From sequence record NC_041916.1: DNA of 64,000 nucleotides; one strand, 5' to 3'. Shown here one piece after another: positions 40,191 through 64,000 of this stretch. How positions within the stretch are numbered: position 1 is the first letter of the stretch; each line of letters opens with the position of its first letter. The position numbers were made by a program, and so were the translations under genes. The notes under the pieces were generated by a model. The model was given only the letters and a program-made list of their open reading frames with translations, was not told the DNA's origin and did not search any database.

Positions 40191-40233
40191 AATAACTCCT
40201 TGCTTAATGGCACGGGTTCTATACGATTCGTAA

Positions 40234-40277: not shown

Positions 40278-42548
40278 TTACGCCACTGGAATAGTGATCA
40301 TTTTCTCTGTACGTCTCACAACGAAACGAAGATCCAACGAATCAGTAGGTTGGATATAAGCCGTGGTGTACATATATCCATTTTCGTTAGTTAGACCGTT
40401 ACCGCACCACGTCCAACCACCATTAACGAGGTCTCGGGTGTAGATGGTAATAAAGTCACCGCTGATCGGATTATCAAACTCATCCAAGTAACGACAACCC
40501 ACATCAAGGGATGTGGTCCCCGGAGCTATACTAGACGGAGTTGGGTCGACGATTTCGATTTTCTTAACGCGTTCCGGACCTACCCAAATCGTCATTCGAT
40601 CTGAATGTCCACCGTCTGGAGTTGACAACCAAAGATCGAATTTCTCACCACTTGCTGGCACTATGATGTCGATACTGAATGAACTGTCTTCCTCAGTCAT
40701 CGCAGTGTGAGTAGAAACGATCTCCGTATCGACGACTACCTTAGCGGTCAGTTCTATTGGTCCGGTGTCTTTAGTACTGTCTTCCCACGTCATGGCTCTC
40801 ATTTTACCAGTGAACGTAAGGATGTCACCATTGGTAACCCCATCAGGGAAACTCGGGTTATCGAAACGATAAAAATCGTAAACCGGTGCAGTACCGTCAT
40901 CCCAAGTCACGTCCACGATCGACATTTCCATTCCGATGCCAACGTATACCTTATTAGGTTCGCTAGCCTTAGGACGTTGTGGAGGAACACTGAGTTCGAA
41001 GTACCCGGTGTCATCAGTAGAGAACATGTGCTTGGTGTCAAAGTCACCAGAACGAGCAATCACACTAGCACGCTGAGTAAGAACCTCGCCGTCTGAACCA
41101 AATACGTACCCGCCCATGATCGCTGGTTGATACGGGTGTAAGTGGGTAGGGTGTGAAATCATCTTAATCGATTTAGGAACCACTTCCCCTTCGGCTGCAC
41201 CTTCGACCCTAATGCTGACGTCACGCTCTCCGATGATGGCGAACAGTTCACGTTGACCGTTTATTTCACTCCAAGGGATGGTGTGATACACAAGACCGTC
41301 CTTATCACCTACCATGGTCCCTACTACCGCACTATCTACGGAATCGTATTTAAAGGTGACTTCTGTCCCACCGCTCACTTTATCAAGTCTGTCACGACAA
41401 GCCATAGGAATGCGTAAGGATTCCCCGTGAGGAGCTTTCAGTGTTCCGTTAGTCAATCGTTCGACGTAAGGGACAACTTCCCCTTCGATATCTTTGATGA
41501 TGAAATCTTCAGCCGTAGCTACGACGTAAGTACAAACCCCGCTTTCCGGAGTGATGTTGATAGAGAAGCGACCGGTGTTGTCGGTGTATTCACTCGTCTG
41601 GAAATCCAGATCACCCCATTCGGTTTTGGTGTAAAGAAAAATGAAGGCGGTTTTCATAATCGCGCCGGCTGCATTTCTAAGTGTACCGGTGAGGTTAAGA
41701 CTGGTGTATTCAGGAACTGCCGTTGGGACAGGATCAAGTTCAATACGTCCCATGATCGTTCTGGCCGTACTCGACCACGTCACGTCCACCGTATCAGACT
41801 TCCCACCTGATGACATCTCGAATTCCACGCTGGTTGTTTTAGTGCCTGCTGGAGAATCCAGTTTAACCATGACGATACCATGCTCGTCACTCACCAATAC
41901 CGTCTCAAACGGATACTCGTCTGATAACGAACGAACTTGTACCGGGATGCCTGCGATGGCTTTGCCGTCGACATCTTTAACCGTACCGAACAGAGTCCAC
42001 ACTTCACCAATTTTGGTACTGAAACGATGGTACATCGGTACCACTTCACCGACTGCAACGTAGTCACTGATGTGTTCGTCCAACACTCCGCCCGCTGCGT
42101 TTTTCAGTTCATGGTTCTCTACACCCACACTGGTTTTAGACCACGGCACTTCTACAATACCGTTAGTCGGGATAGGAATGTGAAGATCTTCATATCCTGA
42201 GATCTCTGCGTGGATACTAATGTACTCGCCTTCGGTTGCGGTGTAGTTAGTCCCGTCCTCATTCTTTAATTGATAAGTCACTACTGAATCAGCGTTGAAT
42301 GGCATGGTAGGATATGTACCAGAAATAATCTCAGCAGTGAGTGGGATACCGGTAAAGGTAATAGTGTGCTCCCCAACCTTACGAATGCCATGGTGGATGG
42401 TGAACTTGACCGGTCCGATATTAGGAGTAGGGGCGGCAGTTAATTGCCATGAACCGTCGGGCTCTGTTGTTACAGTAATGTCTGGAAGACCGTCGTCTCG
42501 TTTAACAATAAGTTCAAGAACGTCACCGGATTTGGTATCAGAACTCAT
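40278..42548 (-). CDS. Ig-like (Big/invasin-type) repeat protein, 756 aa; putative virion fibre/adhesin
   Basis: Repeated ~90-100-aa beta modules (G.V.D.DG..I....V; TD..G.F; V.W); N-terminal KRDDGLPDI...DGSW module shared with the paralogs. Confidence 0.75.
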   Translation of the reverse strand: MSSDTKSGDVLELIVKRDDGLPDITVTTEPDGSWQLTAAPTPNIGPVKFTIHHGIRKVGEHTITFTGIPLTAEIISGTYPTMPFNADSVVTYQLKNEDGTNYTATEGEYISIHAEISGYEDLHIPIPTNGIVEVPWSKTSVGVENHELKNAAGGVLDEHISDYVAVGEVVPMYHRFSTKIGEVWTLFGTVKDVDGKAIAGIPVQVRSLSDEYPFETVLVSDEHGIVMVKLDSPAGTKTTSVEFEMSSGGKSDTVDVTWSSTARTIMGRIELDPVPTAVPEYTSLNLTGTLRNAAGAIMKTAFIFLYTKTEWGDLDFQTSEYTDNTGRFSINITPESGVCTYVVATAEDFIIKDIEGEVVPYVERLTNGTLKAPHGESLRIPMACRDRLDKVSGGTEVTFKYDSVDSAVVGTMVGDKDGLVYHTIPWSEINGQRELFAIIGERDVSIRVEGAAEGEVVPKSIKMISHPTHLHPYQPAIMGGYVFGSDGEVLTQRASVIARSGDFDTKHMFSTDDTGYFELSVPPQRPKASEPNKVYVGIGMEMSIVDVTWDDGTAPVYDFYRFDNPSFPDGVTNGDILTFTGKMRAMTWEDSTKDTGPIELTAKVVVDTEIVSTHTAMTEEDSSFSIDIIVPASGEKFDLWLSTPDGGHSDRMTIWVGPERVKKIEIVDPTPSSIAPGTTSLDVGCRYLDEFDNPISGDFITIYTRDLVNGGWTWCGNGLTNENGYMYTTAYIQPTDSLDLRFVVRRTEKMITIPVA

Positions 42549-42592
42549 AAATCATTCCTTACTTGTTGAAAATGGTCATACGATGTTAAGAA

Positions 42593-42622
42593 AACCAAGT
42601 AGGGGATTAACCCTACTTGGTT
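42593..42622 (-). terminator. Hairpin after the 1156-aa gene
   Basis: AACCAAGTAGGG-GATTAA-CCCTACTTGGTT, a 12-bp stem. Confidence 0.7.
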
Positions 42623-42638
42623 AAGTTTTTAAGGTTTA

Positions 42639-45600
42639 TTAAACGATGTTAAGATCAATGTCACCTAGGTAGATATCACCGTAGTAAGACGTGAAGCTTA
42701 ACGTTAATGGACCTGCGGCCTCGTACTTACGAGTAAGCGACCAAGTACCGTCACTGTTGTAAGTAGGTTTAGCAGTAACACCATCTGTACCGTGGCACGA
42801 TGGGCTTTGTGTCCAGTTACTAAACGTGGTAGGTTCACCATTAGAATCCAATACCTTACCGGTCAAGACGACTTCTTGCGCTGAAGCATTGATCGTAGCG
42901 CTCACCCCGTCATCCAATACGAGTGATTGGTAATCAGGGTTGCCAGAACGCCATGCGACTGTCTTAGAAGAAACAAGCGCATCGGTACCGTAGTAGAGTT
43001 CGAATGAAGTTACGTTAGGGTCTGGTTGCGTAATGCCGAATTCCACCCAACCGTTTTCATCCACATCGTTAGAACGATCGACGTAAACGCCAGTGTGGTT
43101 ATCAAACGTACCGAACGGTGTTGGCCCCGGAATAGGGACACCGAAGCGGTCAGTGATTTGAGCACGGAACTTAGCTAGGGTGGCTGTCTTAAGAGTCTTG
43201 GTCATGTAAACGTTGTTGTAACCTAGGTTATCTTTAAGAAGATTACCAACCCCACTTTCATGGATGGTCCAATCCATCGTGAACGCTTGACTCAAGCCAC
43301 AAGCAGACAACGTGTAATCCACAATGCCTTCAGGTTTTTCCTTAGGAGTCAGGATGACACTGAAGCCGATTGAAGAGTCAGCGACGGTACCTGAAGTCAA
43401 GCGCACTGAGTCACCGGTTGCCGATTCATTAACTGCAATCGGAACACCAGCCAGTGGCAGACCATCGTTATCTTTAAGAACTACAAGGAGTCGAGCACCG
43501 TTACTCTCTGACTTAGTTTGACTCATCGGAGATAACTCAAGAGTGATCGCTGAACGCCACTTAATAGTTCTCGTCGCGAATGACACACCACCGATTTGGA
43601 ATTGAGCTTCGATATCACCCGCTACATCGTAGTTGACAGTAACACTGAACTCACCCGTTGGCTTGATCACACCTACCGCAGTGGTTTCACCCATGACTAA
43701 GTCAAAAGACTCATCCGCTGGAGGTAAGTAAATATCACCGTATTGGTTCAAGATATTACCAGTCAGTGTAATGTCTGAATTTATCACACCGGCGTCAACA
43801 TTACCAAGCATGTCAACCCCACCCGGAACACCTTGGACACGTTCGAAGGTAAGCACTTTCGAAACCATCGCGTCGTCAGTCATGAACCACACTTTGTTTT
43901 CGCCCGGAGTAAACTCACCGATAGAAGCTGTACCTAGACCTGCGTCATTAATAAAGAAGCTGGTCTTAGATGTGTCGCCCGGAGTAAAGGTGTAGTTGCT
44001 CCATGTAGAAACTTGCTTGTTACCTTCGTGGTCATAAACTTCCACATTGACGTCGGTCTTAATCGGACCATTGACAACCTCTGGGAAGTTAAGGATACGA
44101 ATGTCGGTCATGCGAGGTTCTGACAAGTCATTCCAGTAAACCGTCTTCGAGAAGTAGTAGCTGGTCGCACTGTTTACTTTGAAACGTCTTGATGTCTCAC
44201 CTTCAGTGTAAGGGATGGTGAACTCCAAAGTACCGAACTTATCGGTCATGCCACGGATCAACTGAGTGTTGTCCACGCCATCTCTAACATCGAGGATAAC
44301 CCCTTCTACCGGCTGTTCGTCACTGACACGGTATACGTAAACACCCGCTTGGTAATCATTACCTTCGATTGCTCCGTATGACGTATGAGGTGATGCCATC
44401 ACTTTCAGGTCTTCTACCGGAACCGTGAATTCACCCAAGACTCGATCGTCAATCATGAACTCAAACGTAGGAGAAGTATCTTGATCAGTTTCAAGAGTAA
44501 GCAGATCGATTCTAGCAACACCATCAGGATAAACCAGACCGTAACCGCGGTCTGATAGGTCAGCCTTGTTACGTACCGTCATCTTCATCGGATGGGACGG
44601 CTTAGTTAACACTGAACCGCTGTCAAGCGTATTCAAATGCAGACGAGTGGTGTGATCTTCTTTCAGCACACTTGGCGTGAAGTCTTCAAACTCGACACTG
44701 ATTGCTTCGTTGCTCGCTGCACCACCCCAGTTCAGTTGAACCGCGTGACGTGCGTTACCGTAACACACTACCGCGTCATACAGACCATCTGGAAGAGCAT
44801 CGACCGTAACACCTAGTTCGTGATGCGATTTGTCCATCAAAACTGTCACAGGAAGTTTGGTCATCGTGTTCTTAATGAAGACAGAACACTCCGCTTCCAT
44901 GAAGTCCCAAACCTTACCAAGGGCGAAAGCTTTAAAGGTGATCAATGAAGCCACGTCGGTTTCAGTAGATTCCAGTGCCATCACTTCACGAAGTTCATCA
45001 GGTGCAGACTTCATGCCGTAAGTCATTACACGAATGTGTGCACGACTGTCACCTTCACGCACACCCTTACCACGTGCTGCAAAGTAAGAATCGCTCACTT
45101 GCTGAGACATAATACGTGTGAATTCCACGATGCCGTATTTGTCGGTCACTTGAGTGTCCAGCACTTCATCGGTGTTTTGATCAATCAGTTCGATTTCTTC
45201 ACCGACCAAAGGAACACCGTTAGGGTCCACAACCTTAAATGGTAAGAAGGCAGCCGTGTGGATTTGAACTTCTGTTACGGCGTAGTTCAAGTTACTGACA
45301 ACACGTGCAGGTGGGATGTATAACTCTGCCGCCACTTCGTGAGCGTAGTTGTCACAATAAACCATCAGGTTACGAGGAGACGATAGTTCCGCACCGTCTG
45401 GTGCGTTCCAAGTCGTGCCAACCAAATCACCTTCCAAGTCAGTGTGTTCGTTGGTAACGTTCGTCAACAAATTAAGGTCGTAAACGTAAATGTTTTTGTT
45501 TGGTACGACTGCACCGGTGGAGTCTTTAGGAATACCGCTTAAGTCCCCCACTTTGAGATCAAGAACTTTATCAGTAAAGGTCAGTTCGTCAATCGTCATT

Positions 45601-46109
45601 AATGGGACTGTGCCAGCAGCACGCCAGTTAACGACCAAGTCCTTCGTCATGGCACCACAACGAGCTTGAATGGTTCGAGCACCCACTGCTGATTCAGCAG
45701 GAACTTCAATTTCAGCAATGCCGTACTTGTTCGTGGTTACTTTACCAATCAACTCATCAGTGTCTTGGTAATAGAAACGCACAGGAATGTTAGGGAATGG
45801 TGTTCTGTCCACCCCACCAATAGGAGCGGTGCGAACCATGGCAGTACGACCCACTTCCGTTTCACTCACGGTGTAGTCGACGTCTCGCATTTCAACAATA
45901 TCGACGAACGTAAATGGCATGGTCTTAACCACTTTACCGTTCATCTCAAAATTGAACGTAACGGTTTTTGCAACGTCAGCCGTCAACTCCAATTGCCATT
46001 GACCATCGGCATCCGGTGTCACTTCAATGTCCGGTTCACCGTCACTGCGTTTGATGGTGAAAGGACCGGGACCCCATCCCGATAGTACGCGTGAAATTTC
46101 TTCAGCCAT
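42639..46109 (-). CDS. Ig-like repeat protein, 1156 aa; putative virion fibre/adhesin
   Basis: About 11 beta modules with T(N/D)KYG and D..G.P motifs; N-terminal KRSDGEPDI...DGQW module. Confidence 0.75.
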   Translation of the reverse strand: MAEEISRVLSGWGPGPFTIKRSDGEPDIEVTPDADGQWQLELTADVAKTVTFNFEMNGKVVKTMPFTFVDIVEMRDVDYTVSETEVGRTAMVRTAPIGGVDRTPFPNIPVRFYYQDTDELIGKVTTNKYGIAEIEVPAESAVGARTIQARCGAMTKDLVVNWRAAGTVPLMTIDELTFTDKVLDLKVGDLSGIPKDSTGAVVPNKNIYVYDLNLLTNVTNEHTDLEGDLVGTTWNAPDGAELSSPRNLMVYCDNYAHEVAAELYIPPARVVSNLNYAVTEVQIHTAAFLPFKVVDPNGVPLVGEEIELIDQNTDEVLDTQVTDKYGIVEFTRIMSQQVSDSYFAARGKGVREGDSRAHIRVMTYGMKSAPDELREVMALESTETDVASLITFKAFALGKVWDFMEAECSVFIKNTMTKLPVTVLMDKSHHELGVTVDALPDGLYDAVVCYGNARHAVQLNWGGAASNEAISVEFEDFTPSVLKEDHTTRLHLNTLDSGSVLTKPSHPMKMTVRNKADLSDRGYGLVYPDGVARIDLLTLETDQDTSPTFEFMIDDRVLGEFTVPVEDLKVMASPHTSYGAIEGNDYQAGVYVYRVSDEQPVEGVILDVRDGVDNTQLIRGMTDKFGTLEFTIPYTEGETSRRFKVNSATSYYFSKTVYWNDLSEPRMTDIRILNFPEVVNGPIKTDVNVEVYDHEGNKQVSTWSNYTFTPGDTSKTSFFINDAGLGTASIGEFTPGENKVWFMTDDAMVSKVLTFERVQGVPGGVDMLGNVDAGVINSDITLTGNILNQYGDIYLPPADESFDLVMGETTAVGVIKPTGEFSVTVNYDVAGDIEAQFQIGGVSFATRTIKWRSAITLELSPMSQTKSESNGARLLVVLKDNDGLPLAGVPIAVNESATGDSVRLTSGTVADSSIGFSVILTPKEKPEGIVDYTLSACGLSQAFTMDWTIHESGVGNLLKDNLGYNNVYMTKTLKTATLAKFRAQITDRFGVPIPGPTPFGTFDNHTGVYVDRSNDVDENGWVEFGITQPDPNVTSFELYYGTDALVSSKTVAWRSGNPDYQSLVLDDGVSATINASAQEVVLTGKVLDSNGEPTTFSNWTQSPSCHGTDGVTAKPTYNSDGTWSLTRKYEAAGPLTLSFTSYYGDIYLGDIDLNIV

Positions 46110-46129
46110 AATTTCCTCTGTTGTTAAAA

Positions 46130-46153
46130 GTTGCTCCCCTTTCGGAGAGCAAC
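46130..46153 (-). terminator. Terminator after the 1630-aa gene
   Basis: Minus strand GTTGCTCTCC-GAAA-GGGGAGCAAC followed by TTTT. Confidence 0.75.
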
Positions 46154-46163
46154 ACTATTAAAG

Positions 46164-49100
46164 CTAACTAGCGGCGATGTCGATGATCTGACGACCAACG
46201 TAACCGTAGTCATTGAAGTAGAAGGTAAGTACTTCGTTACCCGCCGCAGGTGGAGTCAGTGTAATACTGAATGTACCGTCGGACGTATTTTGGTACTTGG
46301 TAGTAGAACGACCAAAGCGAGCGTACAGTCTTTGAGAGATCGGTACTGTAACACCATCTTTATCCACCACTTTACCAGATACCGTGAACGACTGACCCGC
46401 CACAAACGATGTTGGGAATGGAGCGTCCCAAACGATGTGATGAGGAGTCATTCGGTTTTCGCTGAAGGTAACCCAACTGCTGCTGTAACCTGATGTAGTG
46501 TAGATCGATAGAGTGTCGCCACCGCTTTCATATGTGCTAGCAGGAACTTCAAACTCAAAACGACCGTTTTCATCCACGTCCGCAGTAAAGTCGAAAGTAG
46601 CACCGGAAGCCAACCAAATACCACCAAGTGTTACGTTAGCGATAGGAGCGTTATCGTAGTTAAGGATGAAACCACCCACACGGAACGCTTCACCTGTTTT
46701 CCAGTAACGAGGTGAGTACACGTATAAGGAGTACGGGATGTTGGTATCAGAAGTGAACGTCATGGTGTGTTCCGCTTCTTTACTACCGAACTTGACGACG
46801 TAAGTCAAATCACCTTCGTCATCTCGACCAGCCGGCCACAAGTCAATGTAACCTGCCTCATCAGTCACGTCGCTAGCCAACGAAGTACCGTCACCGCCTT
46901 TCAAGTATACGTTTACTTCAGCGTTTGGCACACCTTTACCGTCAGTGTCTTTAACGTACACAGGTAGGTAAGGGTACTCACCCAAAGGCATCAGTTTGTT
47001 GGCGTCAGGACCTACTTCAATAGAACCAATCGCCATGCCAGTCATCCAAGTTTCACCTAGGATTAATTCTGGGCGACGGTAAATCTCAAAGCGGTTCTCA
47101 CCTTTAGCGGAGATCTCAACAGTGATGCTGAATGAACCACCAACGTCAGAAGTACCTTCAAAGACTTTACCATCGGATTTACGACGTGCAAAGAGAGGTT
47201 CCACTTTCGTAGTAGAGTAACGTACCCCTTCTTTGGTTAACACACCTGTCACCGTTCCAGTTCCACCGACTTCCGCATTGTCGCCATCAGTGTGAGCTCT
47301 CATGCCGTCGATTGGGTCGTAAACACCTACGATCCATTCTACGTCGAACTCTAGGTAAGCACCTGAACCACAAAGCGCAAATTTGTGTACGCCTGTAGCG
47401 TGCACCGGAATAGAGAACTCGACCGTACTATTGTTCACAATAGATGCGGTTAGGTCTGTGTAGGTCTTAGTACCAAAGTCGTACAATTGAAGGGTGCTAG
47501 CGGTGTTAGCAGGGCGGTTGTTCATACCCAGAGTAACCAACGTACTGAACGCTTCGCCTTCACTACACTTGTTCGTTAGAGATATGTTAGTGATCTCGGA
47601 AGCTGGAGTGAAGTTACGACTCACCCAAGTTACCGTACGACTCTCCATGATACCACCACAGTAAGACATCGAGAAGTCTAACGACGCCGCGTCCTCTGAA
47701 GGGTACGGAGTTTTCACACGAACCAAACCATCGGCATTAGTCAATCCACCTACAGTACCAGTGACACTATCCCCAGTTAGAGCTACGAATGCACCTTCAA
47801 CCGGATTGCTGTCCTCGTCTGTCACCAAAGCAACCAGTTCCGCTGGTGTCTGGTAGTAAGGACCGTCAATACTCATCGGAGTGATTTCTAAATACGCACC
47901 TGAGATGACCGGGAACGTCATAGTGTGAACTAACGTATCGTTAAGTTTCCACTTGATGTTGATATCACCTACCTTATCAGGGTATTCGAATACTTCAAAT
48001 TCACCATCTGGAGTTAACAATGGGTTGTTGGTGTAACCTTGGTTATTTGTTTGAGTCACCAGTTCTGGAACACCTGTCAAACGCACCGGACCACCATCAG
48101 CGTCAACCAATGAACCAGACACCAACATATCGTTGTCCATTACAAAGACTTTAGAAGTCGTTGAAGCCAGTTCGAAATGTGTTGGGTTGATTAATGGGAT
48201 GTCTGACCAAACCATACGGAATGGGAAGAAACCATCGTCAGTCGCTACCACGTAGTCTTTAATGCCAGTACCCGGAACCGGTGCAGTGAAACGACCGTCC
48301 ATAAAGGTACGGCTTCCCATGCCCGATAGTTCAGTACCTGTTACCGCATCGTAGAAACGTAAGTTGGAGTTATGTACGAATTCACCTAGGTGTGATTTAA
48401 CACGACCCACTAGGATACCGTCATGACCGTTAGCCACGTCCAGCGTCCAATCCATGTCTTCAAAGACAGCACCGGTTTTACTTGTAGTCCATTCAACCAC
48501 GTAAGTAGTAGAAATACCGTTCGACACAAAGTAAAGTGTTTCGTTACCTTCCACTTTAACGTGGTTAGTTTCGTAGTACGCTTCACCTTTGTCGTTGGTC
48601 ATGACCGTAGCGTACAGTTCACCCGCCGCGTCAGTCTTATGAACTTCGATGACCGCGTTAGCAACCGGGCTACCTTCAGCATCAGTTGCTAGAATCGCAA
48701 ACTTAGAAGTGCTGTTGACGTTACCGTAGACTGGTGACCAAGGTTGAACTTTCAACGCCGTCACTGGTGCAGATACGGTATTGGTTAGGTTGTTCTTATC
48801 AAAGACGAATTCTTTAAAACCAGTCTCTGTGTAGTAAACCCAGTTAGTGACCTGCGTATCGTCTGTCGGCCAGTTAAGGTCCATTTTACCAGAGCGATTC
48901 GTGTAACGACCATTTAGGTTGTGGGCTTCTTTGTTGTAAATGCCCGCTTTGTTTTCCATCCAAACTTCGTATAACGCGCACGCTTCGTTGGTTAACAGTT
49001 TACCGAATTGGTCTTTTGCTTTAACGTCAACAGACCACTCAGTGCCCGGAAGTTGGGTTTCTGAGAAATGCAGTGAGATGTCACACGCTGTTGACTTACG

Positions 49101-51056: not shown

Positions 51057-51110
51057 TGCTTACTCCATTTAAATAGACTTAAGACCTAGTCATAGGATTT
51101 CAAAAAATAA

Positions 51111-51142
51111 CCATAACTCGGAGTTTCCACTCCGAGCCATGG
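51111..51142 (-). terminator. Terminator after the 1726-aa gene
   Basis: Minus strand CCATGGCTCGGAGT-GGAA-ACTCCGAGTTATGG followed by TTATTTTTT. Confidence 0.8.
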
Positions 51143-51175
51143 TGTTGTGTAAAGATTTCTCTTTACGAGTTAAAG

Positions 51176-56356: not shown

Positions 56357-56422
56357 TATTAACTCCGTTAATTAGGTTAATTAAATTCTTTTGTTGACAT
56401 CATCGTTGATTAAAGGATGAAA

Positions 56423-56444
56423 TAGGGGGAACGAATTCCCCCTA
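56423..56444 (-). terminator. UUCG hairpin after the largest gene
   Basis: Minus strand TAGGGGGAA-TTCG-TTCCCCCTA with only a weak U-tract. Confidence 0.55.
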
Positions 56445-56482
56445 AGATTATGGACTGTCTTGTGACACTAAATCACAGACCC

Positions 56483-59400
56483 CTAGATTATCGTCGCCGA
56501 ACCTTTCATGGTTACGGTGTCATCGACGATACCCACCGGTGGTGAGTCTTCCGCAATATCAATACGGATTTCGAACGGCTTCGGTAAGACCTCACCATTT
56601 TCAATCAGAATGTATTTGTTGGACGATTCATCCACGTTCACACGGTTAATGGTAATCAAGCCATCGATGACCTCGACGCTCACTTCTTCGTAGTAAGAGC
56701 CAGTGTAAAGAATCATGTCTTTAACACCCGCTTGGTCCCAAGGACCGATTTCTACGTCAAAGAGTTTAGAACCACCGTCTACCGCACTTTGGTTGTAGTT
56801 GTAGTTATGACGATCGTACAGACCGACAGGCATGCTGCTGATCGGGTTACCACGTTGATCGATCACTTTACCACTGACGTTGAACAGGTCGCCTAGGGCG
56901 ATACCAGTTGCTTTAGTCAGCTCAGAGAACGACGTAGGTAACAAGATGCTGTCCGAAGACCAGTCTACGTTATGTTCATCACGTTTGCCAGCGTACACTG
57001 CAATAGCGGTTACACGATCACGGTCAACGATGTAAGGAACTCGGAATGTTGCCACGCCGTATTCATCTGTTGTCGCTTTCGCGTTCAACACACCATTGCC
57101 TTCGATAGAGATACCGAACGTACCACCAACAACTGGGTTACCCAAGTTATCTTTAAAGCCGTACGCCAAAGTAGCTTCTTTACCGAAGTGTAGATCAGAA
57201 CTGCTGTAAGGTGCAGGATGCATCACCACGTTGTCGTGGTAGCGTACTGTGAGGTCACCCATGCCGATGTCATTGTCACCCGCTGGTGTCAACTTCCAAA
57301 TAACTGTATCTTCTGCTCCGTGAGTCAGTGTTACTGTCCAGTTACCTTCAGTGTCAATGACACCTTTAATAACCGCACCGCTTACTGAGTTCACTGCATC
57401 AAATTCAGTTTCCTCTGTAGGAGTAAATGGAGTGCCATCCAACTGATGCGCTGTACCCGTTACCACCATATCTGAGTTGGTTGTCCAGAAGTCACTTAGG
57501 TACTCTGATGGACGTAGGTCAGCCAACACCATAGGGCGAGCGTTCCAAACCACTTGTTCATTTTGATGGTGCATGTTCAATGCGAACACTACGTTGTTAG
57601 TCCCTTCTAGGAATGGACCGTAAGTTGCGTTCAACATACCGTCGCTGGTCAGGTTGTCTGACAGATCAACCAATTCCAGTTTCTCTTTCGAGAACACAAC
57701 CGCCCAACCATTTTCAGCAGACTGGTTACCGTTTTGTGTTAACACGGTACCGTTGACGCTTAGTGGGTTAGGAAGTTCGGCTTGACGGACGATATTCAAA
57801 ATACCGAAACTTGCCGGGTATTGTTCTGAATCGTTGACTTCCACCCAAGTAATGTAACCCTCGGACTTAGTATCACCGAACACAGACTCGACATTATCGT
57901 TCTCAACAAACTCACCCCAACGTAGGGTAGATTCTGCGATACCGAATCGGTCAGTACGTACTTTGCTGATTGGTACGTTAGGGAACGCATTCAGTCTAAA
58001 CTCTACTGTGGCGTTAGGAACCCCATTGCCTGCTGCATCTTTAACGTAAGCCGCGATGAACACGTCTCCGCCTCGGATAGCAGCGTCTTGAGAGTATTTA
58101 GCGTACGTGACTGCCGCACCACTGATGAACTTAACTGCTTTAGTAGCAATGTCTTGTCCATCTTTCACAAAGCTGTAGTGCCATTGACCGTCACTGCTTT
58201 GTTCCACTGGTATTGAAATCGTACCATCAGGCATCGCCCAAGCAGTACCGAACTCAACATCGTCAGTACGACGGTAACTAACTTCAACCGGACCTTGGAT
58301 ACGCATACGTTGTTCACCTTCTTCAGGTGTCCAGCGCATAAGCTTACCATCGATCAACGTTTCCGCACCAGTGCCTACTACCTCGGCAGTATCAGTTGGG
58401 ATCATCCAACCAATCGCTGCGTATTGAACAGCCGGAGCTGACAACCAAGTGATCGTTCTAGTGAACTGAGAAGACTCAGTGTAGAACGCAATGTCGTGTT
58501 CCCCTTCTGATTGTGCTGCCAAATGTCCGTAGAACATCTCGCGGTCATTATCGTGCTTGGTTAACGTTACAGTTTGTAGTGTACGTTTGTTAAACGCTGA
58601 CATAGCTGTAACCGGAACGTAACGATCGTTAAAGCCACCCATCGCCACTGCAACAACTGCATCTGAGCCCGCACCGACTGTGTCAGTATGGTCTGACCAA
58701 CGAACCATAACAGGCAAGCTGTAATCGTTCTTAGTCCAGTTGATGGTATGTTCTTCATTGAAGTCATTGGTGTAACTAGCCAGTACTTTGATGTCGCCAT
58801 CCCAGTAAACTGGTACCATTTGAACTTCGCCGAACACGGTGGTTTCTTTTGGATTCTCATCGTTGTCCGGAAGGATGAATTCAGCAATACCGTTTTCATC
58901 AGTAAGAACAGTTTGTGACTGTAGACCCGCGTAACGCAAACTGATGGTTACAGGGATGTTAGGTACAGCGTTGCCGTACTCACCCATGGCAGCAATTGCT
59001 ACAAAACCTTGTTCACGGTAAACCTGACGGGTGTTAGAGTAAGGTAGTACGCGAAGACCTACTACTGGTTCGGCTTCACCAACCCACTCGATGGTTTCTT
59101 CACGAATGTCATAACCTGTTGCGAACAACAGATGACGTGTTCCATCCCAAGAGCTTCCGCCTGCGATTGTTGCTGACAGACTACCGTCACCGCCAAACTC
59201 GTAATAAGGAGGACGATGATTTACGTCAGACGCTGTACCACAGTCAACGTAATCGAACGAACCTTTATCAAAGATAAAGAAGTGTTCAGTCGGACTACTT
59301 TCACCTGCTTTCGCGCTCACGCCAGTGGTCAGTCTTACTTCACCACGACCATAACCGATTTGATCGATAAACGTCACATCAATTACATCAGCCATTAGTG

Positions 59401-62400
59401 GATCAGTTGTACCAGCATCGTACCAAGTCACCGTTTGAGTTCTAGGCTGTGCCTCAACAAACACACTCGCCACACCGGAGGTGGTTTCGATAGTTTGACT
59501 TGTACCACTCAACACTGTTGGAGTGTCAATGACACCATTGGTTGGTGTGTCTGGGTTAAACGAAGCGACTACTGTATTGGTTCCCGGTACCGCATCGTCA
59601 CTACCAAGCACCAGTTCCATGATACCCCACTCATCGGTAATACCGTTCGTGTAGATTTCATTTTCTTCTGGGTTGATAGCTTTCAACAGAGTCAGCCCTG
59701 CTACTGCTCGATCGTGTTCATCACGAACACCCCAAGCTACTCGCGCCGATTCCCCAGTAAAGCGGAAGGTTTGAGAGTAAGGCAGTTCTGTTACCGTACC
59801 ATTGATGTATTCGATTTCAAACGTGGTTAAGATGCGTGAACCATCTTTGATGGTGTACACAACTGTACCCGCGCCCACTACATCATGGATGTAGAAACCG
59901 ATTGAACCGTCACTGTTAACCACGGTGTTACCAGTTGAACCGTCACTACCTTCCCATGTTACTGGGGTAGGAGTAGATGGTTGGTAAACCGATTCGTCAC
60001 CTGCAATACCTGTACCACGAATGTAGACCGTAGGAGCATCTACCGGAGTTAGGGCTTTTGTTGCGGTGTCGTCAGCCAGCTCAATGCGAGATAACACTTT
60101 ATCGTAGACTCGCCATGTGATCGGCCACACTTTAGTATCACACTCAGAGAAGAACACTAGGTTGTGTTTACCTTCAGGAAGTGGATCCACCCAGAACGCT
60201 TGTTCACCGTTACCTAACACACCTGCCCAATCGTTAAGATCGTGTGCTGGAGGTAGGTTATCCGGGTCGTAAGGTTGTAGAGTCACCAAAGAGTAATCGT
60301 CACGGTTGTAACACATCAAACGACCAGTAGGGACTGGGTCGCCTTCTTCATTTGATACAACTGCACGCACTAACGGTGTAACACCGTTGTAAACAAACTG
60401 TGGTGCGTTAAATGAAGAGATCGTGTGAGCGATGTCTGTTTCTTCTGTCCAAATTAATTCCACCGTTGCTTCTTTCTCACCAGCAAAGCCAGCGATTTCA
60501 CCAAAGCCTGTTTGGTAGTAAGGAACTGTGTATTCAAACTTACCGTACTTGTCAGTTATGCCATAACCCAAGTCTTTCTCTACCGGCAAGCGTTGGACGA
60601 TGTCAATGCGTTGACCTACCATCACATCACCGTTCTCGTCTACCACGTACCAGCCAATGGTCATGGTCTCACCCACCGGAATGCGGTAGTCTAGGTCGAC
60701 GTTAGGTAATGGACGAATAAAGATCTCGCCTTCGAATTTAACTGTGAATGTACCGACTACACGAGTGTTAGATTTAAAGGTGTATTGGATATCGCCTTCT
60801 ACATCGCTAGATGCTTTGAACGACCAACGACCATCACCCATGGAGTGTGCTTTCGCTACATTACCGTTACCGTACTCTACATCAAACTCGAATTCAGTGC
60901 CCGGAGCAAACAGTTTACCATGTTGGTCTACTGTCTCACCCTCCAACAACGCTGGAAGACCAAGTTTCGTTTCACGCGGCAAGCCGGCGTCAAACTTCAA
61001 GTTGTCTAAGCGTGCTGGTTCACCCATCCAAGTAATGGTGTGGGTTACCGGAGCCTTACCTTCTAGTTCAAACAAGAACGTAGTAACTTCCCAATCTTTA
61101 AACGGACCGACTTGAGTTTCAAAGCGACCGTCGATGCCTGCGTAAATCAGATCAGACTCACCGCTACCTAGTCGGGTAACCTTGATTGGGGTTTGACCTT
61201 CACTTACAAAGTCATTGCCTTCTGCATCCACCAATTTACCGGAAATAGCCACGGTAGTACCGGCAGGTGCTTCTGTTGGGTTTTCACTATCCAGTACAAT
61301 GCGGTCAGCCACGATAACTTCTTTCTCCCACGTTGCCGTGCCGAAAGCGAAGTCGTTGTCTGTCCATACGACGATGTCGTAAGTATTGCCCGGTTCCATG
61401 TACGCGTGGTTCAACACATACGTACCTTTAGCGGCTGTCGTAGTAACGTTAGCCGGATTCCATTGAGGGCCGAAACCAAACGTTGTAGTGACACCTTGTA
61501 CCAGTTCACCGAATTGATCGTAGACACGACCTGTGACCGCCATTTGATCGGTACCCACAAAGGTCCAGTCAATTTGGTCTAAGGTGATGCGGTCGCCGTA
61601 AGACTCAGTTTCTACCCAAGTCAATACACGAACGTCGTCGGTACCGCCCGCCTTGATGTTCATGACTGCAACTTTCTCATCACCCGTATGGAAACGAGTC
61701 AACAAGAAATCACCATTTTCATCTGTGGTCTCCGCTCGGATAGTATCCAAGTCATCACCAACCATGGAGTAGAATGGGAAGTCACGTAGACGGTTTTGTT
61801 CGTCGTCTTCCAAGTAACCGTAAGCGCGTGCAGGTTTGTTCACACCCACTTTCGTAGGAGAGTAAGGATAGAACTCACTAACGATGGTGTTTTCATTCTC
61901 GATGATCTCGATATCTTTTTCCAAGATATAAACTGGTGCTTTACCCGTTTCGAATGCAAACTCGATAGTTTCAGTTTCACCTACTGGTTTCTCGGACCAT
62001 GTGTAGAAGCGGAATGAACCGTCAATCTTCACAGGAACTTTACGTGGGGACTTATCGTGGAATACACCACCACGAACCATTAAGTTCGTTAAGCCGTCTT
62101 TCATTGGTTTACCGAACTGGTCGTAAACCACACCACTTACCGCAAAGACTTCATTCAGACCAATGCGACCCACTACTTCACGATCAAGTTCAATCGACGT
62201 AGGTTCTGGTGTTTCTGTACTTGGGCCTTCCACGACATCAATAGAGACACCTGTGGTTGCCAATAACAGACGTTCGCCTTGAATGGATTCGTAAACCCAA
62301 CGAACAAAGATCGTACGACCTTGTGGTTCTTGTACATCCAAGTAAAGCTTGTCTGCCCATTTCGATATCGCGTAAGAGTACACTTTACCTGAGCTGACTT

Positions 62401-63943
62401 CAATCTCAAAGTGAGTAGGTTTCATCGGACCTTTCTCACGCTGGCTATTGTACGACGGTTCTACTGCATAGTAGGTGTCTTCCAACCACTCGTCTTGAGA
62501 TTCGTAACCTTTACCGAATTCGATTTGCTGACGACCATCGGCTTGGTTAACCGCTTTGAACGTAGGGTCGTTGTAAGCACTTTGATCGTAAGAATAACGA
62601 ACGTCAAACTTGCTGCCGTCTTCGTTACCCGGTGCTTTCAGAATGAACGTCGTAGACTGACGCATGATCATTGGTTCGAACGTAGGAACCACATCACTTA
62701 GACGTAGGTTCAACTCAATGGTTTGTTCCACGCCGTAAGTCGTAGGACGGAAAGCAGGAGACAACTCATTGATACGAACGTAATCGGTAGCGTCCATAAT
62801 GAAAGAACGATCTAAGTCGGTCAGGTAGTGTTTCAACTGGTACTGACCATTCACCCATGTAGGGTAAGAGTAAAGCTTAGGTGAGTAAGCCCCGTCGAAG
62901 TCTATCGCCAGCAATGAGTAAGAATCTCGGTACTGGTTCGGGTTACCCGGTTGAGCTTCGTAGATGTGCTCGTCTGGGTCCAAGTTGTACACTAAGGTCA
63001 AAGTACCACGTTGCCCCGGAGTCGAAGGCTTGTGTTCATTCAGACCGTACAAAATGACCTTCTGACCATCGATCGGTAACTCTTCTGATTTCGAACCGTC
63101 ACTGTAGTGCACCAAGGCACGGAATGCCAAGTTTTGCAGCACCGTGTTAACTGGCACGTTCAGAGTTTTAGGGTCACCAGAGTTCAGGAACCAAGGAGCG
63201 AGCAACTCCACTTTACGGATGTAACGTTTACCCACTTGGTGGTCACGTAGCATAGCCGTGTGCTGAACCGTTAGCGAACGCGCTTTCGGAATCATGTTAC
63301 CGGTATGGTCGAACCACACCAAGGTCGCACGACTGCCATCTGGCAGTTCTTCCGCATTACGGTTCACGGAGAATGGTTGAGTAACCATGATCTCTTTGTT
63401 CGACAAATCGTGGTGTGCAGCTAACGTAGCAGGAATGCGGTTAGAGATCATTTCGTTGTTACTACCGTACACAACCGAAATGACTTTACCATTTTCCCCT
63501 ACGGTGTTGCCTTCGTACAACAGAGCGTACGCGGCACCCGGTGCCATTACTTGACCATCTACCACGGCACGGTTAGGACGCACTGAGTAGTCGATACCAA
63601 CGATCGCTTCTCCTTGGTAACCCGCAGGCAAACCAAAGATGGAGTTAAGTGGGTCGGAGTTACCATCACCACCGGTGTTAAAGATAGGTTCTAGGGTAGA
63701 ACGTAAGTCCCCTTCCCAGTTAACGTGCGAAACGATGTACCATTGTTGAGCGACAGGGTCAACGACCATTTCTTTCTCTTTAGGTACACGGTAACGACTC
63801 TCCTCCCCCGGCTTCACCGTATCAGGGTTATAGACATCCCAAATATAGTGAAAACGTCCGGCTTCATTATCGTTAGGGAGCTGTGGACCAGCTCCCGGGA
63901 TAACGGCGGATTGGGTAGGACTGTTTAAAGTTTTACTAAACAT
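56483..63943 (-). CDS. Giant virion protein (about 2486 aa): ~575-aa non-repetitive N-terminal domain plus about 19 Ig-like modules
   Basis: The track starts at TTG 63955, but ATG 63943 has a GAGG SD. Repeats (G.V.DQ.G; TD.YG; T.TW) begin near 62200. The N-terminal part lacks the repeat pattern and may be the baseplate/tail anchor (inference). Confidence 0.8.
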   Translation of the reverse strand: MFSKTLNSPTQSAVIPGAGPQLPNDNEAGRFHYIWDVYNPDTVKPGEESRYRVPKEKEMVVDPVAQQWYIVSHVNWEGDLRSTLEPIFNTGGDGNSDPLNSIFGLPAGYQGEAIVGIDYSVRPNRAVVDGQVMAPGAAYALLYEGNTVGENGKVISVVYGSNNEMISNRIPATLAAHHDLSNKEIMVTQPFSVNRNAEELPDGSRATLVWFDHTGNMIPKARSLTVQHTAMLRDHQVGKRYIRKVELLAPWFLNSGDPKTLNVPVNTVLQNLAFRALVHYSDGSKSEELPIDGQKVILYGLNEHKPSTPGQRGTLTLVYNLDPDEHIYEAQPGNPNQYRDSYSLLAIDFDGAYSPKLYSYPTWVNGQYQLKHYLTDLDRSFIMDATDYVRINELSPAFRPTTYGVEQTIELNLRLSDVVPTFEPMIMRQSTTFILKAPGNEDGSKFDVRYSYDQSAYNDPTFKAVNQADGRQQIEFGKGYESQDEWLEDTYYAVEPSYNSQREKGPMKPTHFEIEVSSGKVYSYAISKWADKLYLDVQEPQGRTIFVRWVYESIQGERLLLATTGVSIDVVEGPSTETPEPTSIELDREVVGRIGLNEVFAVSGVVYDQFGKPMKDGLTNLMVRGGVFHDKSPRKVPVKIDGSFRFYTWSEKPVGETETIEFAFETGKAPVYILEKDIEIIENENTIVSEFYPYSPTKVGVNKPARAYGYLEDDEQNRLRDFPFYSMVGDDLDTIRAETTDENGDFLLTRFHTGDEKVAVMNIKAGGTDDVRVLTWVETESYGDRITLDQIDWTFVGTDQMAVTGRVYDQFGELVQGVTTTFGFGPQWNPANVTTTAAKGTYVLNHAYMEPGNTYDIVVWTDNDFAFGTATWEKEVIVADRIVLDSENPTEAPAGTTVAISGKLVDAEGNDFVSEGQTPIKVTRLGSGESDLIYAGIDGRFETQVGPFKDWEVTTFLFELEGKAPVTHTITWMGEPARLDNLKFDAGLPRETKLGLPALLEGETVDQHGKLFAPGTEFEFDVEYGNGNVAKAHSMGDGRWSFKASSDVEGDIQYTFKSNTRVVGTFTVKFEGEIFIRPLPNVDLDYRIPVGETMTIGWYVVDENGDVMVGQRIDIVQRLPVEKDLGYGITDKYGKFEYTVPYYQTGFGEIAGFAGEKEATVELIWTEETDIAHTISSFNAPQFVYNGVTPLVRAVVSNEEGDPVPTGRLMCYNRDDYSLVTLQPYDPDNLPPAHDLNDWAGVLGNGEQAFWVDPLPEGKHNLVFFSECDTKVWPITWRVYDKVLSRIELADDTATKALTPVDAPTVYIRGTGIAGDESVYQPSTPTPVTWEGSDGSTGNTVVNSDGSIGFYIHDVVGAGTVVYTIKDGSRILTTFEIEYINGTVTELPYSQTFRFTGESARVAWGVRDEHDRAVAGLTLLKAINPEENEIYTNGITDEWGIMELVLGSDDAVPGTNTVVASFNPDTPTNGVIDTPTVLSGTSQTIETTSGVASVFVEAQPRTQTVTWYDAGTTDPLMADVIDVTFIDQIGYGRGEVRLTTGVSAKAGESSPTEHFFIFDKGSFDYVDCGTASDVNHRPPYYEFGGDGSLSATIAGGSSWDGTRHLLFATGYDIREETIEWVGEAEPVVGLRVLPYSNTRQVYREQGFVAIAAMGEYGNAVPNIPVTISLRYAGLQSQTVLTDENGIAEFILPDNDENPKETTVFGEVQMVPVYWDGDIKVLASYTNDFNEEHTINWTKNDYSLPVMVRWSDHTDTVGAGSDAVVAVAMGGFNDRYVPVTAMSAFNKRTLQTVTLTKHDNDREMFYGHLAAQSEGEHDIAFYTESSQFTRTITWLSAPAVQYAAIGWMIPTDTAEVVGTGAETLIDGKLMRWTPEEGEQRMRIQGPVEVSYRRTDDVEFGTAWAMPDGTISIPVEQSSDGQWHYSFVKDGQDIATKAVKFISGAAVTYAKYSQDAAIRGGDVFIAAYVKDAAGNGVPNATVEFRLNAFPNVPISKVRTDRFGIAESTLRWGEFVENDNVESVFGDTKSEGYITWVEVNDSEQYPASFGILNIVRQAELPNPLSVNGTVLTQNGNQSAENGWAVVFSKEKLELVDLSDNLTSDGMLNATYGPFLEGTNNVVFALNMHHQNEQVVWNARPMVLADLRPSEYLSDFWTTNSDMVVTGTAHQLDGTPFTPTEETEFDAVNSVSGAVIKGVIDTEGNWTVTLTHGAEDTVIWKLTPAGDNDIGMGDLTVRYHDNVVMHPAPYSSSDLHFGKEATLAYGFKDNLGNPVVGGTFGISIEGNGVLNAKATTDEYGVATFRVPYIVDRDRVTAIAVYAGKRDEHNVDWSSDSILLPTSFSELTKATGIALGDLFNVSGKVIDQRGNPISSMPVGLYDRHNYNYNQSAVDGGSKLFDVEIGPWDQAGVKDMILYTGSYYEEVSVEVIDGLITINRVNVDESSNKYILIENGEVLPKPFEIRIDIAEDSPPVGIVDDTVTMKGSATII

Positions 63944-64000
63944 TTTTAACCTCAAAGTGTCCGTTAGTATTAATACGAGATTCTAAGAAAACCTCATTAA

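What the first reader, a model, noticed from the sequence alone, without database searches (positions are those of the whole stretch)
40278..63955. Five giant Ig-repeat genes with split modules: possible branched fibre built by inter-protein strand complementation
Seen: a full internal module reads [x(I/L)x(L/I)DxxxPxxxxxG-xxxx(I/L)xG] + [xxxDxxGxP...V...DGxW/F...VxW], e.g. DRIVLDSENPTEAPAGTTVAISGKLVDAEG...IDGRF...HTITW. The four downstream proteins (1726, 1630, 1156, 756 aa) all BEGIN with only the second part (consensus KRSDGxPDIxVxxxxDGxW), missing the first strand(s). The two upstream proteins END with only the first part, apparently twice each. The 2490-aa protein ends ITINRVNVDESSNKYILIENG / FEIRIDIAEDSPPVGIVDDTVTMKGSATII, and the 1726-aa protein ends GAEGVSIDTMELPLAIAGSTTTLSGTTII / GAESITVDEMETPMGTTTGTTTISGNAS. 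The 1630, 1156 and 756-aa proteins appear to end in complete modules. Each gene has its own SD and downstream hairpin. Known: donor-strand complementation of incomplete Ig folds assembles chaperone-usher pili. Inference: roughly four donor tails and four acceptor heads would build a branched tree of Ig fibres (2490 to 1726 to tip proteins) anchored by the non-repetitive N-terminal domain, a plug-in adhesin architecture I do not recognise from phages.
Basis: partly seen in the sequence, partly recalled or inferred. Interest (0 to 1): 0.8.

Follow-up and report, generated by a model that had tools for sequence, protein, structure and literature searches.

The report
Plug-in Ig fibres on phage baseplate
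Five neighbouring genes of the jumbo Vibrio phage pTD1 encode long rods of immunoglobulin-like modules hung from a baseplate protein, and their cut-off first and last modules suggest, without proving, that the rods plug into one another by sharing a beta-strand.

Summary
The window is Vibrio phage pTD1 (100% identity). There are five minus-strand genes of invasin-type Ig modules. All four downstream proteins start, right after Met, inside a module that lacks strand A. The two upstream proteins end in 58-62 extra residues that match only the first 28 positions of the module (strands A, A', B).

New context: residues 39-557 of the first protein are homologous to phiKZ gp26 (PDB 9xqd). In phiKZ, gp26 cross-links the outer baseplate, with 30 copies per virion. 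So these are baseplate fibres, not head decoration. Outgroup phages lack the array.

The split between gene 1 and gene 2 is conserved in all ten related genomes examined, in some with only a 10-nt spacer. A second, independent split occurs in a metagenomic relative. AlphaFold2 gives a six-strand head next to a seven-strand module, and tails that are disordered when modelled alone.

Against the neat 4:4 tree: phiKT1028 has 5 heads but 2-3 tails, and Aphroditevirus has 2 heads but 1 tail. Strand B is present on both sides of each split. No complex could be modelled.

Verdict: strand complementation is plausible (about 0.5). A fixed branched tree is not general. This is a new variant of known phage fibre systems.

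The parts
56483..63955 (-). g2490 (pTD1 gp161). The annotated start is ATG 63943. It consists of a baseplate anchor, about 19 Ig modules and two C-terminal tails.
62210..63955 (-). N-terminal domain (aa 1-582), homologous to phiKZ gp26, the cross-linker of the outer peripheral baseplate.
   Evidence: PDB 9xqd PHIKZ026, E=2.3e-59, query aa 39-557 aligned to chain 22-539. tblastn finds it in 290 chimallivirus-type phage records. Synteny sheath | gp28 | gp27 | gp26 | terminase. Role taken from PMC13250141.
56660..62209 (-). Ig-module array of g2490 (aa 583-2432). The profile detects 17 modules.
56594..56659 (-). Tail T1 (22 aa, contains VDESSN), a strand-A-like segment. It is the most conserved tail and is present at the end of gene 1 in every relative.
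   Evidence: 91% identical to VP4B while the flanking modules are 47-68%
56486..56575 (-). Tail T2 (30 aa). It follows the linker EVLPKP (56576-56593) and matches module profile positions 5-28.
51176..56356 (-). g1726 (gp160, annotated 'putative invasin'). It has a long-type head, 16 detected modules and two tails.
56114..56356 (-). Head of g1726 (aa 1-81, long type). It starts at strand B and lacks strand A.
   Evidence: Profile positions 24-99. AlphaFold2 gives six strands, mean pLDDT 84 for the whole 175-aa model and block means of 68-87 within the head. Pfam Invasin_D3 positions 27-95 of 98.
51275..51364 (-). Tail T3 (30 aa).
51179..51262 (-). Tail T4 (28 aa). It matches profile positions 1-28 and is 71% identical to VP4B.
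46164..51056 (-). g1630 (gp159). It has a short-type head (aa 1-68, 50853-51056) and ends in a complete module.
42639..46109 (-). g1156 (gp158). It has a short-type head (aa 1-73, 45891-46109) and ends in a complete module. Only 23% identical to its VP4B counterpart overall.
40278..42548 (-). g756 (gp157). It has a short-type head (aa 1-67, 42348-42548) and ends in a complete module.
56357..56482 (-). Spacer between g2490 and g1726 (126 nt). It holds a terminator-like hairpin (56426-56442), then GGAG before the ATG.
51057..51175 (-). Spacer between g1726 and g1630 (119 nt). It holds a 15-bp hairpin plus T run (51110-51143), then GGAG.
46110..46163 (-). Spacer between g1630 and g1156 (54 nt), with a hairpin and GAGG.
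42549..42638 (-). Spacer between g1156 and g756 (90 nt), with a hairpin and AAGGA.

Best explanation
The five genes encode a set of long, thin fibres attached to the outer rim of the baseplate.

The first protein is the local version of phiKZ gp26, a multi-copy cross-linker of the peripheral baseplate. In this phage subfamily (Gorgonvirinae) it has been extended by about 19 invasin-type Ig modules. It ends in two unpaired half-modules, the tails, each made of strands A, A' and B.

The four downstream proteins are Ig rods of about 7-17 modules. Their first module is a specialised, highly conserved head that begins at strand B and has no strand A.

Most likely a tail inserts its strand(s) into the open edge of a head, by beta-strand complementation or exchange, so that distal rods plug onto proximal ones. 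T1 would take the long-type head of g1726, a pairing conserved across the subfamily. T2, T3 and T4 would take the three short-type heads.

Because strand B is present on both sides, the tail hairpin would either displace the head's own first strand or add to its edge.

The distal rods evolve fast and probably make the first contacts with the host surface.

Shown: homology, truncation, conservation, predicted disorder of the tails, and baseplate anchoring by homology.

Inferred: tail-head binding, branching, and host contact.
For: - Anchor: g2490 aa 39-557 match PHIKZ026 in PDB 9xqd at E=2e-59. The gene order matches phiKZ. The role and copy number of gp26 (five per star lobe, six lobes) come from PMC13250141.
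- Origin of the array: the closest outgroups have a ~575-aa gp26 homologue followed directly by terminase, so the array is a clade-specific addition.
- Heads are truncated: 20 of 21 first modules start at profile position 22 or later, against 1 of 314 internal modules. The model shows six strands against seven.
- Tails: they match profile positions 1-28 and are disordered alone, pLDDT below 50, beside modules with pLDDT above 90.
- Conservation of the split: T1 followed by a long head occurs in all relatives. Only 10 nt separate stop and ATG in Aphrodite1, PDCC-1, phiKT1019 and a metagenomic contig; 2 TSL-2019 and USC-1 have the same 10-nt spacing by their annotated coordinates.
- Independent second split: in the metagenomic contig, gene 2 ends in a tail and gene 3 starts 16 nt later at profile position 11.
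- Selection on tails: T1 is 91% and T4 71% identical between pTD1 and VP4B. Both g1726 tails are kept in three lineages.
- Heads are the best conserved part of each downstream protein, for example 74% against 39% overall for g1726 versus phiKT1028.
- Class co-occurrence: genomes with only T1 have only long heads. Short heads occur only where T2-like tails exist.
Against: - No complex could be predicted or measured here, so binding is an inference.
- Counts do not match in phiKT1028 (5 heads, 2-3 tails; its gene 2 ends in a complete module) or in the Aphroditevirus isolates (2 heads, 1 tail). This requires heads to compete for tails on the many copies of the anchor.
- Strand B is duplicated in tail and head, which simple complementation does not need.
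- pTD1 T3 and T1 are weak profile matches.
- The class co-occurrence rests on essentially one phylogenetic contrast.
- I found no proteomic data for pTD1. Virion presence is inferred from the PHROG label 'virion structural protein' and from gp26 homology.
Confidence: 0.5

Rival explanations
1. The heads are a common attachment domain that docks on some other baseplate or fibre component, not on the tails. The tails have a different role. They might cross-link neighbours, as the C-terminus of phiKZ gp26 does, or pair with each other.
For: The numbers of heads and tails disagree in phiKT1028 and in Aphroditevirus. The C-terminus of phiKZ gp26 inserts into neighbouring proteins (PMC13250141). Strand B is already present in the heads.
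Against: This does not explain why the tails are precisely the part of the module that the heads lack. It also does not explain why tail and head sit on the two sides of the same gene boundary with 10-16 nt spacers, or why tail class and head class co-occur.
Confidence: 0.28
2. The partial modules are neutral scars of gene fission or of module-level recombination. The five proteins act independently of one another.
For: The overlap of strand B on both sides looks like a duplicated junction. The modules recombine freely: gene numbers and lengths differ between relatives.
Against: The tails persist, in frame, across two genera and about 25% nucleotide divergence. T1 is more conserved than its flanking modules. 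Two tails are kept in tandem in three lineages. The heads form one tight family that always starts at the same strand. Scars would be expected to decay or be trimmed.
Confidence: 0.12
3. The genes are joined during translation by readthrough, frameshift or bypass into one giant protein, so the modules are not really split.
For: The 10-nt spacer in Aphroditevirus and the similar strand-B residues on both sides of the junction.
Against: In Aphroditevirus, gene 2 is in a different frame, with two stop codons in that frame just before its ATG. In pTD1 the spacers are 54-126 nt, each with a strong hairpin plus T run and its own Shine-Dalgarno box. No module-like reading exists in any other frame.
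Confidence: 0.02
4. The proteins are capsid decoration fibres of the Hoc type, as older 'structural head protein' annotations of the phiKZ homologue suggest.
For: KTN4 annotates the gp26 homologue as 'putative structural head protein'. The PHROG category is 'head and packaging'. The cluster lies next to the terminase gene.
Against: The cryo-EM atlas places phiKZ gp26 in the outer peripheral baseplate (PMC13250141; PDB 9xqd).
Confidence: 0.05

Closest known systems
phiKZ gp26 (PHIKZ026), cross-linker of the outer peripheral baseplate
   Same: The N-terminal ~560 aa of g2490 are homologous over nearly the whole of gp26. The gene order is the same, next to the gp27- and gp28-like genes, the sheath and the terminase.
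   Different: gp26 is 552 aa and ends there. Here about 1900 aa of Ig modules and two tails are appended, and four further Ig genes are inserted before the terminase.
Inverse-autotransporter adhesins (invasin, intimin, InvE, FdeC) with Big_1 / Invasin_D3 arrays
   Same: The module fold and sequence family are the same: Pfam Big_1 at E=4e-31 in g1726, and Foldseek top hits InvE, invasin and intimin. The best non-phage match to the head profile that could be traced is a 3943-aa bacterial protein with IAT_beta plus Big_1 repeats.
   Different: There is no beta-barrel anchor, no signal peptide context and no C-terminal lectin-like tip. The array is divided among five polypeptides and is anchored to a phage baseplate protein.
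Donor-strand complementation and exchange in chaperone-usher pili
   Same: The idea is the same: an Ig-like fold with one strand missing, completed by a short extension of the neighbouring subunit, builds a non-covalent fibre.
   Different: In pili, strand G is missing and the donor is an N-terminal extension. Here strand A is missing and the donor would be C-terminal. No chaperone or usher is present. The donor also carries a copy of strand B. Binding has not been demonstrated.
Goslar DUF7941 'fibre cloud' on the chimallivirus peripheral baseplate (PMC13742148)
   Same: Both are in the same virus family and at the same location. Both are proposed to form head-to-tail chains through a disordered segment of one protomer binding the N-terminal domain of the next.
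   Different: The protein family is unrelated: Pfam scans of the five proteins gave no DUF7941 hit. Here the chain would be hetero-oligomeric and would go through a split Ig module.
Branched receptor-binding complexes of phages (CBA120 tailspikes, G7C gp63.1/gp66); from my own knowledge, not tested here
   Same: Several receptor-binding proteins with conserved N-terminal attachment parts and variable distal parts are hung on one another or on one adaptor.
   Different: Those use dedicated adaptor domains on trimeric spikes. Here the subunits are presumably monomeric Ig rods, and the proposed joint is a shared Ig module.

Membership tests
Bacterial Ig-like domain group 1 (Pfam PF02369 Big_1 / PF09134 Invasin_D3) | Score above the Pfam gathering threshold | tested here: met
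   Big_1 scores 107.3, 60.6, 51.0 and 47.4 bits (cut-off 34.9) in g1726, g2490, g1630 and g756. g1156 is just below on Big_1 (32.6) but above on Invasin_D3 (35.7 against 33).
Bacterial Ig-like domain group 1 | Seven-strand beta-sandwich fold similar to invasin and intimin domains | tested here: met
   The AlphaFold2 models of complete modules have strands A, A', B, C, E, F and G with pLDDT above 90. Foldseek top hits are InvE 5n40, invasin 1cwv and intimin 6tpl.
phiKZ gp26 family (peripheral baseplate cross-linker) | Sequence homology over the full length of gp26 | tested here: met
   phmmer against PDB: 9xqd PHIKZ026, E=2.3e-59, query 39-557 aligned to chain 22-539 of 552. tblastn gives 28% identity and E=2e-50 to phiKZ-type phages.
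phiKZ gp26 family | Conserved gene neighbourhood (sheath, gp28-like, gp27-like, gp26-like, terminase) | tested here: met
   (PhiKZ_VTX and DUF7193 on the two upstream genes)
phiKZ gp26 family | Physical location in the outer baseplate of the virion | not testable with these tools
   Known for phiKZ only (PMC13250141). I found no structural or proteomic data for pTD1.
Chaperone-usher donor-strand system | Subunit Ig fold that lacks the C-terminal strand G, with an N-terminal donor extension | tested here: not met
   Here the missing strand is the N-terminal strand A, and the candidate donors are C-terminal.
Chaperone-usher donor-strand system | Dedicated periplasmic chaperone and outer-membrane usher genes | tested here: not met
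   None is annotated in the locus or its flanks. The Pfam scans covered only the five Ig proteins and the terminase, and found only Ig-type families.
Chaperone-usher donor-strand system | Demonstrated strand insertion between subunits | not testable with these tools
   No multimer prediction was available. Single-chain models only.
Chimallivirus DUF7941 fibre proteins | DUF7941 domain | tested here: not met
   No such Pfam hit in any of the five proteins.

The most novel reading that the evidence does not exclude
Gorgonvirinae jumbo phages build combinatorial or branched baseplate fibres from separate Ig-rod proteins through a split Ig module. A C-terminal A-A'-B hairpin of one protein would complete, or swap into, the strand-A-less first module of the next, with two plug-and-socket classes: T1 with long heads, and T2-like tails with short heads. 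This would be a virus-encoded counterpart of donor-strand assembly that needs no chaperone, and it would let the phage swap distal host-binding rods as cassettes.
Probability: 0.4. Interest if true: 0.8.

Novelty: new variant of a known kind. Interest (0 to 1): 0.6.

Why it matters
The outer baseplate and fibres of nucleus-forming jumbo phages are the least resolved part of their virions; both recent atlases leave them largely unmodelled.

This locus makes a concrete, testable proposal for how one subfamily attaches very long adhesin-like rods to the gp26 network. It points to a general trick, a domain split between two genes, for joining fibre proteins without dedicated adaptor domains.

It also identifies which parts are conserved sockets and which are fast-evolving distal rods. 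That is the information needed to read host specificity from these genomes.

Tried and rejected
With 7 long heads it returned only the already known isolates.
- A literature search for donor-strand mechanisms in phage tail fibres found no paper with that wording among the 15 papers listed. Papers on pTD1, pVa-21, the phiKT phages and Aphrodite1 say nothing about these proteins.
- A search for a natural fusion of tail and head in one chain, using the last module plus tails of g1726 as query, found only orthologues with the same tails and one unrelated-N-terminus protein. The 2840-position PHROG 27570 profile hints at a longer relative, but I did not find it.
- The motif ATCGTATR, seen after three terminators, is not enriched in the window: 2 matches against 4.5 expected. 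I dropped it as a promoter candidate.
- P0002 could not be traced to a contig.
- Parallel rank orders of tail and head conservation (T1 > T4 > T3 > T2; g1726 > g1630 > g756 > g1156) suggest a pairing. With four items this is not a test, and I do not count it as evidence.
- Translational joining of the genes was considered and rejected (see the rivals).
- A tail-head complex could not be modelled. The structure tool takes single natural chains only, and no chain of 1200 aa or less carries both a head and a tail.
Full report
**Identity and coordinates**

The region 40278-63955 is 100% identical to Vibrio phage pTD1 (AP017972 / NC_041916; Gorgonvirinae, Tidunavirus), a 239-kb phiKZ-related jumbo phage. 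It holds five minus-strand ORFs of 2490, 1726, 1630, 1156 and 756 aa at exactly the coordinates given.

GenBank names them gp161 ('virion structural protein'), gp160 ('putative invasin') and gp159-157 (hypothetical). The terminase large subunit follows. On the other side lie two conserved structural genes and then the sheath and tube genes. The 2490-aa reading starts at a TTG. The annotation and all relatives use an ATG four codons further in, which overlaps the upstream gene by 8 nt.

**What the proteins are made of**

Pfam finds Big_1, Invasin_D3, macroglobulin MG3/MG4 and CarboxypepD_reg-type beta-sandwich matches throughout, and nothing else. All five match existing PHROG families: four nearly end to end, and g1156 only in parts.

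I built a 100-position profile of the repeat by iteration over 29 proteins from nine genomes. It finds 17, 16, 13, 10 and 7 modules in the five proteins. Within the 64-kb window no other reading frame carries such modules.

AlphaFold2 models of complete modules are confident (pLDDT above 90) beta-sandwiches with strands A, A', B, C, E, F and G. Foldseek puts them nearest to InvE, invasin and intimin. The highest-scoring non-phage protein for the head profile that could be traced to a contig is a chromosomal inverse autotransporter.

**The heads**

Each of the four downstream proteins begins, 5-14 residues after Met, in the middle of a module, at profile position 24, 36, 40 or 38. In the full set, 20 of 21 first modules of downstream proteins begin at position 22 or later. 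Only 1 of 314 good internal modules does, and the median start is position 5.

There is no room for a missing strand upstream of the start codons. The AlphaFold2 model of g1726 residues 1-175 (mean pLDDT 84) shows six strands in the head and seven in the following module. The head lacks strand A.

The heads are not arbitrary truncations. They form one tight family, with R, D, G and W invariant in 18 sequences. They score 100-121 bits against a head profile, while any internal module scores 25 bits or less.

In a library of 1.84 billion representative proteins, a full-length head at the N-terminus occurs only in about 16 proteins, all of this phage group.

Heads come in two lengths: a long type that keeps the B-C hairpin, and a short type that lacks about 12 residues.

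**The tails**

After their last complete module, g2490 and g1726 carry 58 and 62 further residues. The other three proteins carry only the 11-14 residues that finish the module. Each extra stretch is two units joined by a short proline-rich linker.

| Tail | Profile positions matched | Shuffles reaching the score (of 200) |
|---|---|---|
| T1 | 5-16 | 8 |
| T2 | 5-28 | 0 |
| T3 (pTD1) | — | 41 (not significant) |
| T3 (VP4B orthologue) | — | 0 |
| T4 | 1-28 | 2 |

(All.)

By comparison with the model of the complete modules, a tail holds strands A, A' and essentially all of strand B. In the model of g1726 residues 1477-1726, the two tails have pLDDT below 50 and no secondary structure, next to two modules above 90.

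**Where the assembly sits**

Residues 39-557 of g2490 match PHIKZ026 in PDB entry 9xqd (E=2e-59, nearly full length of the 552-aa chain). The gene order around it is that of phiKZ gp28-gp27-gp26-terminase.

In the phiKZ atlas, gp26 cross-links the outer peripheral baseplate. There are five copies in each of six star lobes, and its termini reach into neighbouring proteins (PMC13250141). The nearest outgroups (Aeromonas phage AerS_266, Klebsiella phage YC1) have a ~575-aa homologue followed at once by the terminase.

The Ig extension and the four extra genes are therefore an addition made in Gorgonvirinae. The array most likely hangs from the baseplate rim, possibly in up to 30 copies if the phiKZ architecture holds.

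**Comparative test of the split**

I compared these relatives:
- VP4B
- phiKT1028
- phiKT1019
- Aphrodite1
- PDCC-1
- 2 TSL-2019
- USC-1
- a 244-kb metagenomic contig (L015)
- a Logan-assembly contig (L020)

.

In every one, gene 1 ends with a T1-like segment and gene 2 begins with a long head. In the Aphroditevirus genomes and in L015 the stop and the next ATG are only 10 nt apart. The ATG is in another frame and is preceded by stop codons in that frame, so the two are separate proteins (for 2 TSL-2019 and USC-1 the spacing is from the annotated coordinates).

In L015, gene 2 also ends in a 21-residue tail. Gene 3 starts 16 nt later with an ordinary module cut at profile position 11. This is a second, independent split at the same structural place.

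Conservation between pTD1 and VP4B:
- T1 is 91% identical, where the neighbouring modules are 47-68%. T4 is 71% identical.
- T3 and T4 are both kept in pTD1, VP4B and L020.
- Heads are always the best conserved part of their protein, and the distal parts diverge fast. g1156 is 23% identical to its VP4B counterpart overall but 46% in the head.

**What does not fit the 4:4 tree**

- phiKT1028 has five head-bearing genes, but its gene 2 ends in a complete module. Only the two or three tails of gene 1 remain.
- The Aphroditevirus isolates have two head-bearing genes and only T1.
- A one-to-one tree is therefore specific to pTD1, VP4B and L020.
- The classes do co-occur. Genomes with only T1 have only long heads, and short heads occur only where T2-like tails exist. 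But this rests on few independent lineages.
- If tails are sockets on a protein present in many copies, several heads could compete for them. That would reconcile the counts.

**Mechanism and confidence**

I consider it well supported (about 0.75) that this is a baseplate-anchored, multi-protein set of Ig fibres, and that the heads are attachment domains.

That attachment goes through the tails by strand complementation is plausible but unproven (about 0.5). The tails are exactly the piece the heads lack. They sit across the same gene boundaries, are under selection, and are disordered when modelled alone. However, strand B is duplicated, the counts vary, and I could not model a complex.

The rivals are: heads docking elsewhere, neutral scars, translational joining, and capsid decoration. 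They are weighed in the Rival explanations section.

**Comparison with known systems**

The modules belong to the Big_1/invasin family. The anchor belongs to the gp26 family. The system is not a member of the chaperone-usher family: a different strand is missing, the polarity is opposite, and there is no chaperone or usher. It might still work in a similar way.

Chains of proteins on the chimallivirus baseplate rim have been proposed for Goslar, with an unrelated domain (PMC13742148). Branched receptor-binding complexes are known in other phages (my own knowledge).

I therefore rate this as a new variant of a known kind.

Noticed in passing
window 63943-63955: The mechanical ORF for the first gene starts at a TTG. 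The annotated ATG, four codons downstream, matches all relatives and overlaps the stop of the upstream gp27-like gene by 8 nt, which suggests translational coupling.
   Followed up: partly
L002 8074-11001 (VP4B gp051, 975 aa): This tip protein ends in VLPKPAE. That is the same VLPKP motif that links T1 to T2 in gene 1 of pTD1, VP4B and phiKT1028, but no tail follows it here. It may be a lost or never-completed tail.
   Followed up: no
L015 25574-28789; L016 8310-11525; window 37857-40190: The terminase large subunit is 777 aa in pTD1 and VP4B but 1071 aa in Aphroditevirus and the metagenomic relative, with matching N- and C-termini. There it is annotated variously as DarB-like antirestriction protein or helicase. 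A roughly 1130-aa terminase in Klebsiella phage YC1 is annotated as intein-containing. Pfam found nothing in either the 777-aa or the 1071-aa form.
   Followed up: partly
L003 38936-40977 (phiKT1028): Thymidylate synthase is annotated in two pieces that flank a putative homing endonuclease gene. This looks like an intron- or intein-type insertion that pTD1 and VP4B lack.
   Followed up: no
P0153 (1508 aa, Logan assembly): This protein has the same kind of terminal Ig modules (42% identical to the end of g1726) but a different, non-head N-terminus, and it ends in a complete module. It may be a different anchor carrying the same rods.
   Followed up: no
window 40220-40227 and 42577-42584, minus strand: The only two copies of ATCGTATR in the window lie in spacers of this cluster, just after terminator-like hairpins. 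Similar CGTATR or TGTATG sequences occur in two spacers each of VP4B and phiKT1028. The motif is not enriched overall: 2 matches against 4.5 expected.
   Followed up: partly
phrog_27570: The PHROG profile that g1726 matches end to end is 2840 positions long. g1630 matches its later part. This hints at a relative in which a g1726-like protein is much longer or is fused to further modules.
   Followed up: no
The best solved-structure sequence matches to the head profile are weak: a tandem Ig-like repeat of an ice-binding adhesin (4p99, E 0.001) and filamin C Ig domains (E about 0.005). From my own knowledge, filamin domains are known to bind partners by strand augmentation.
   Followed up: no
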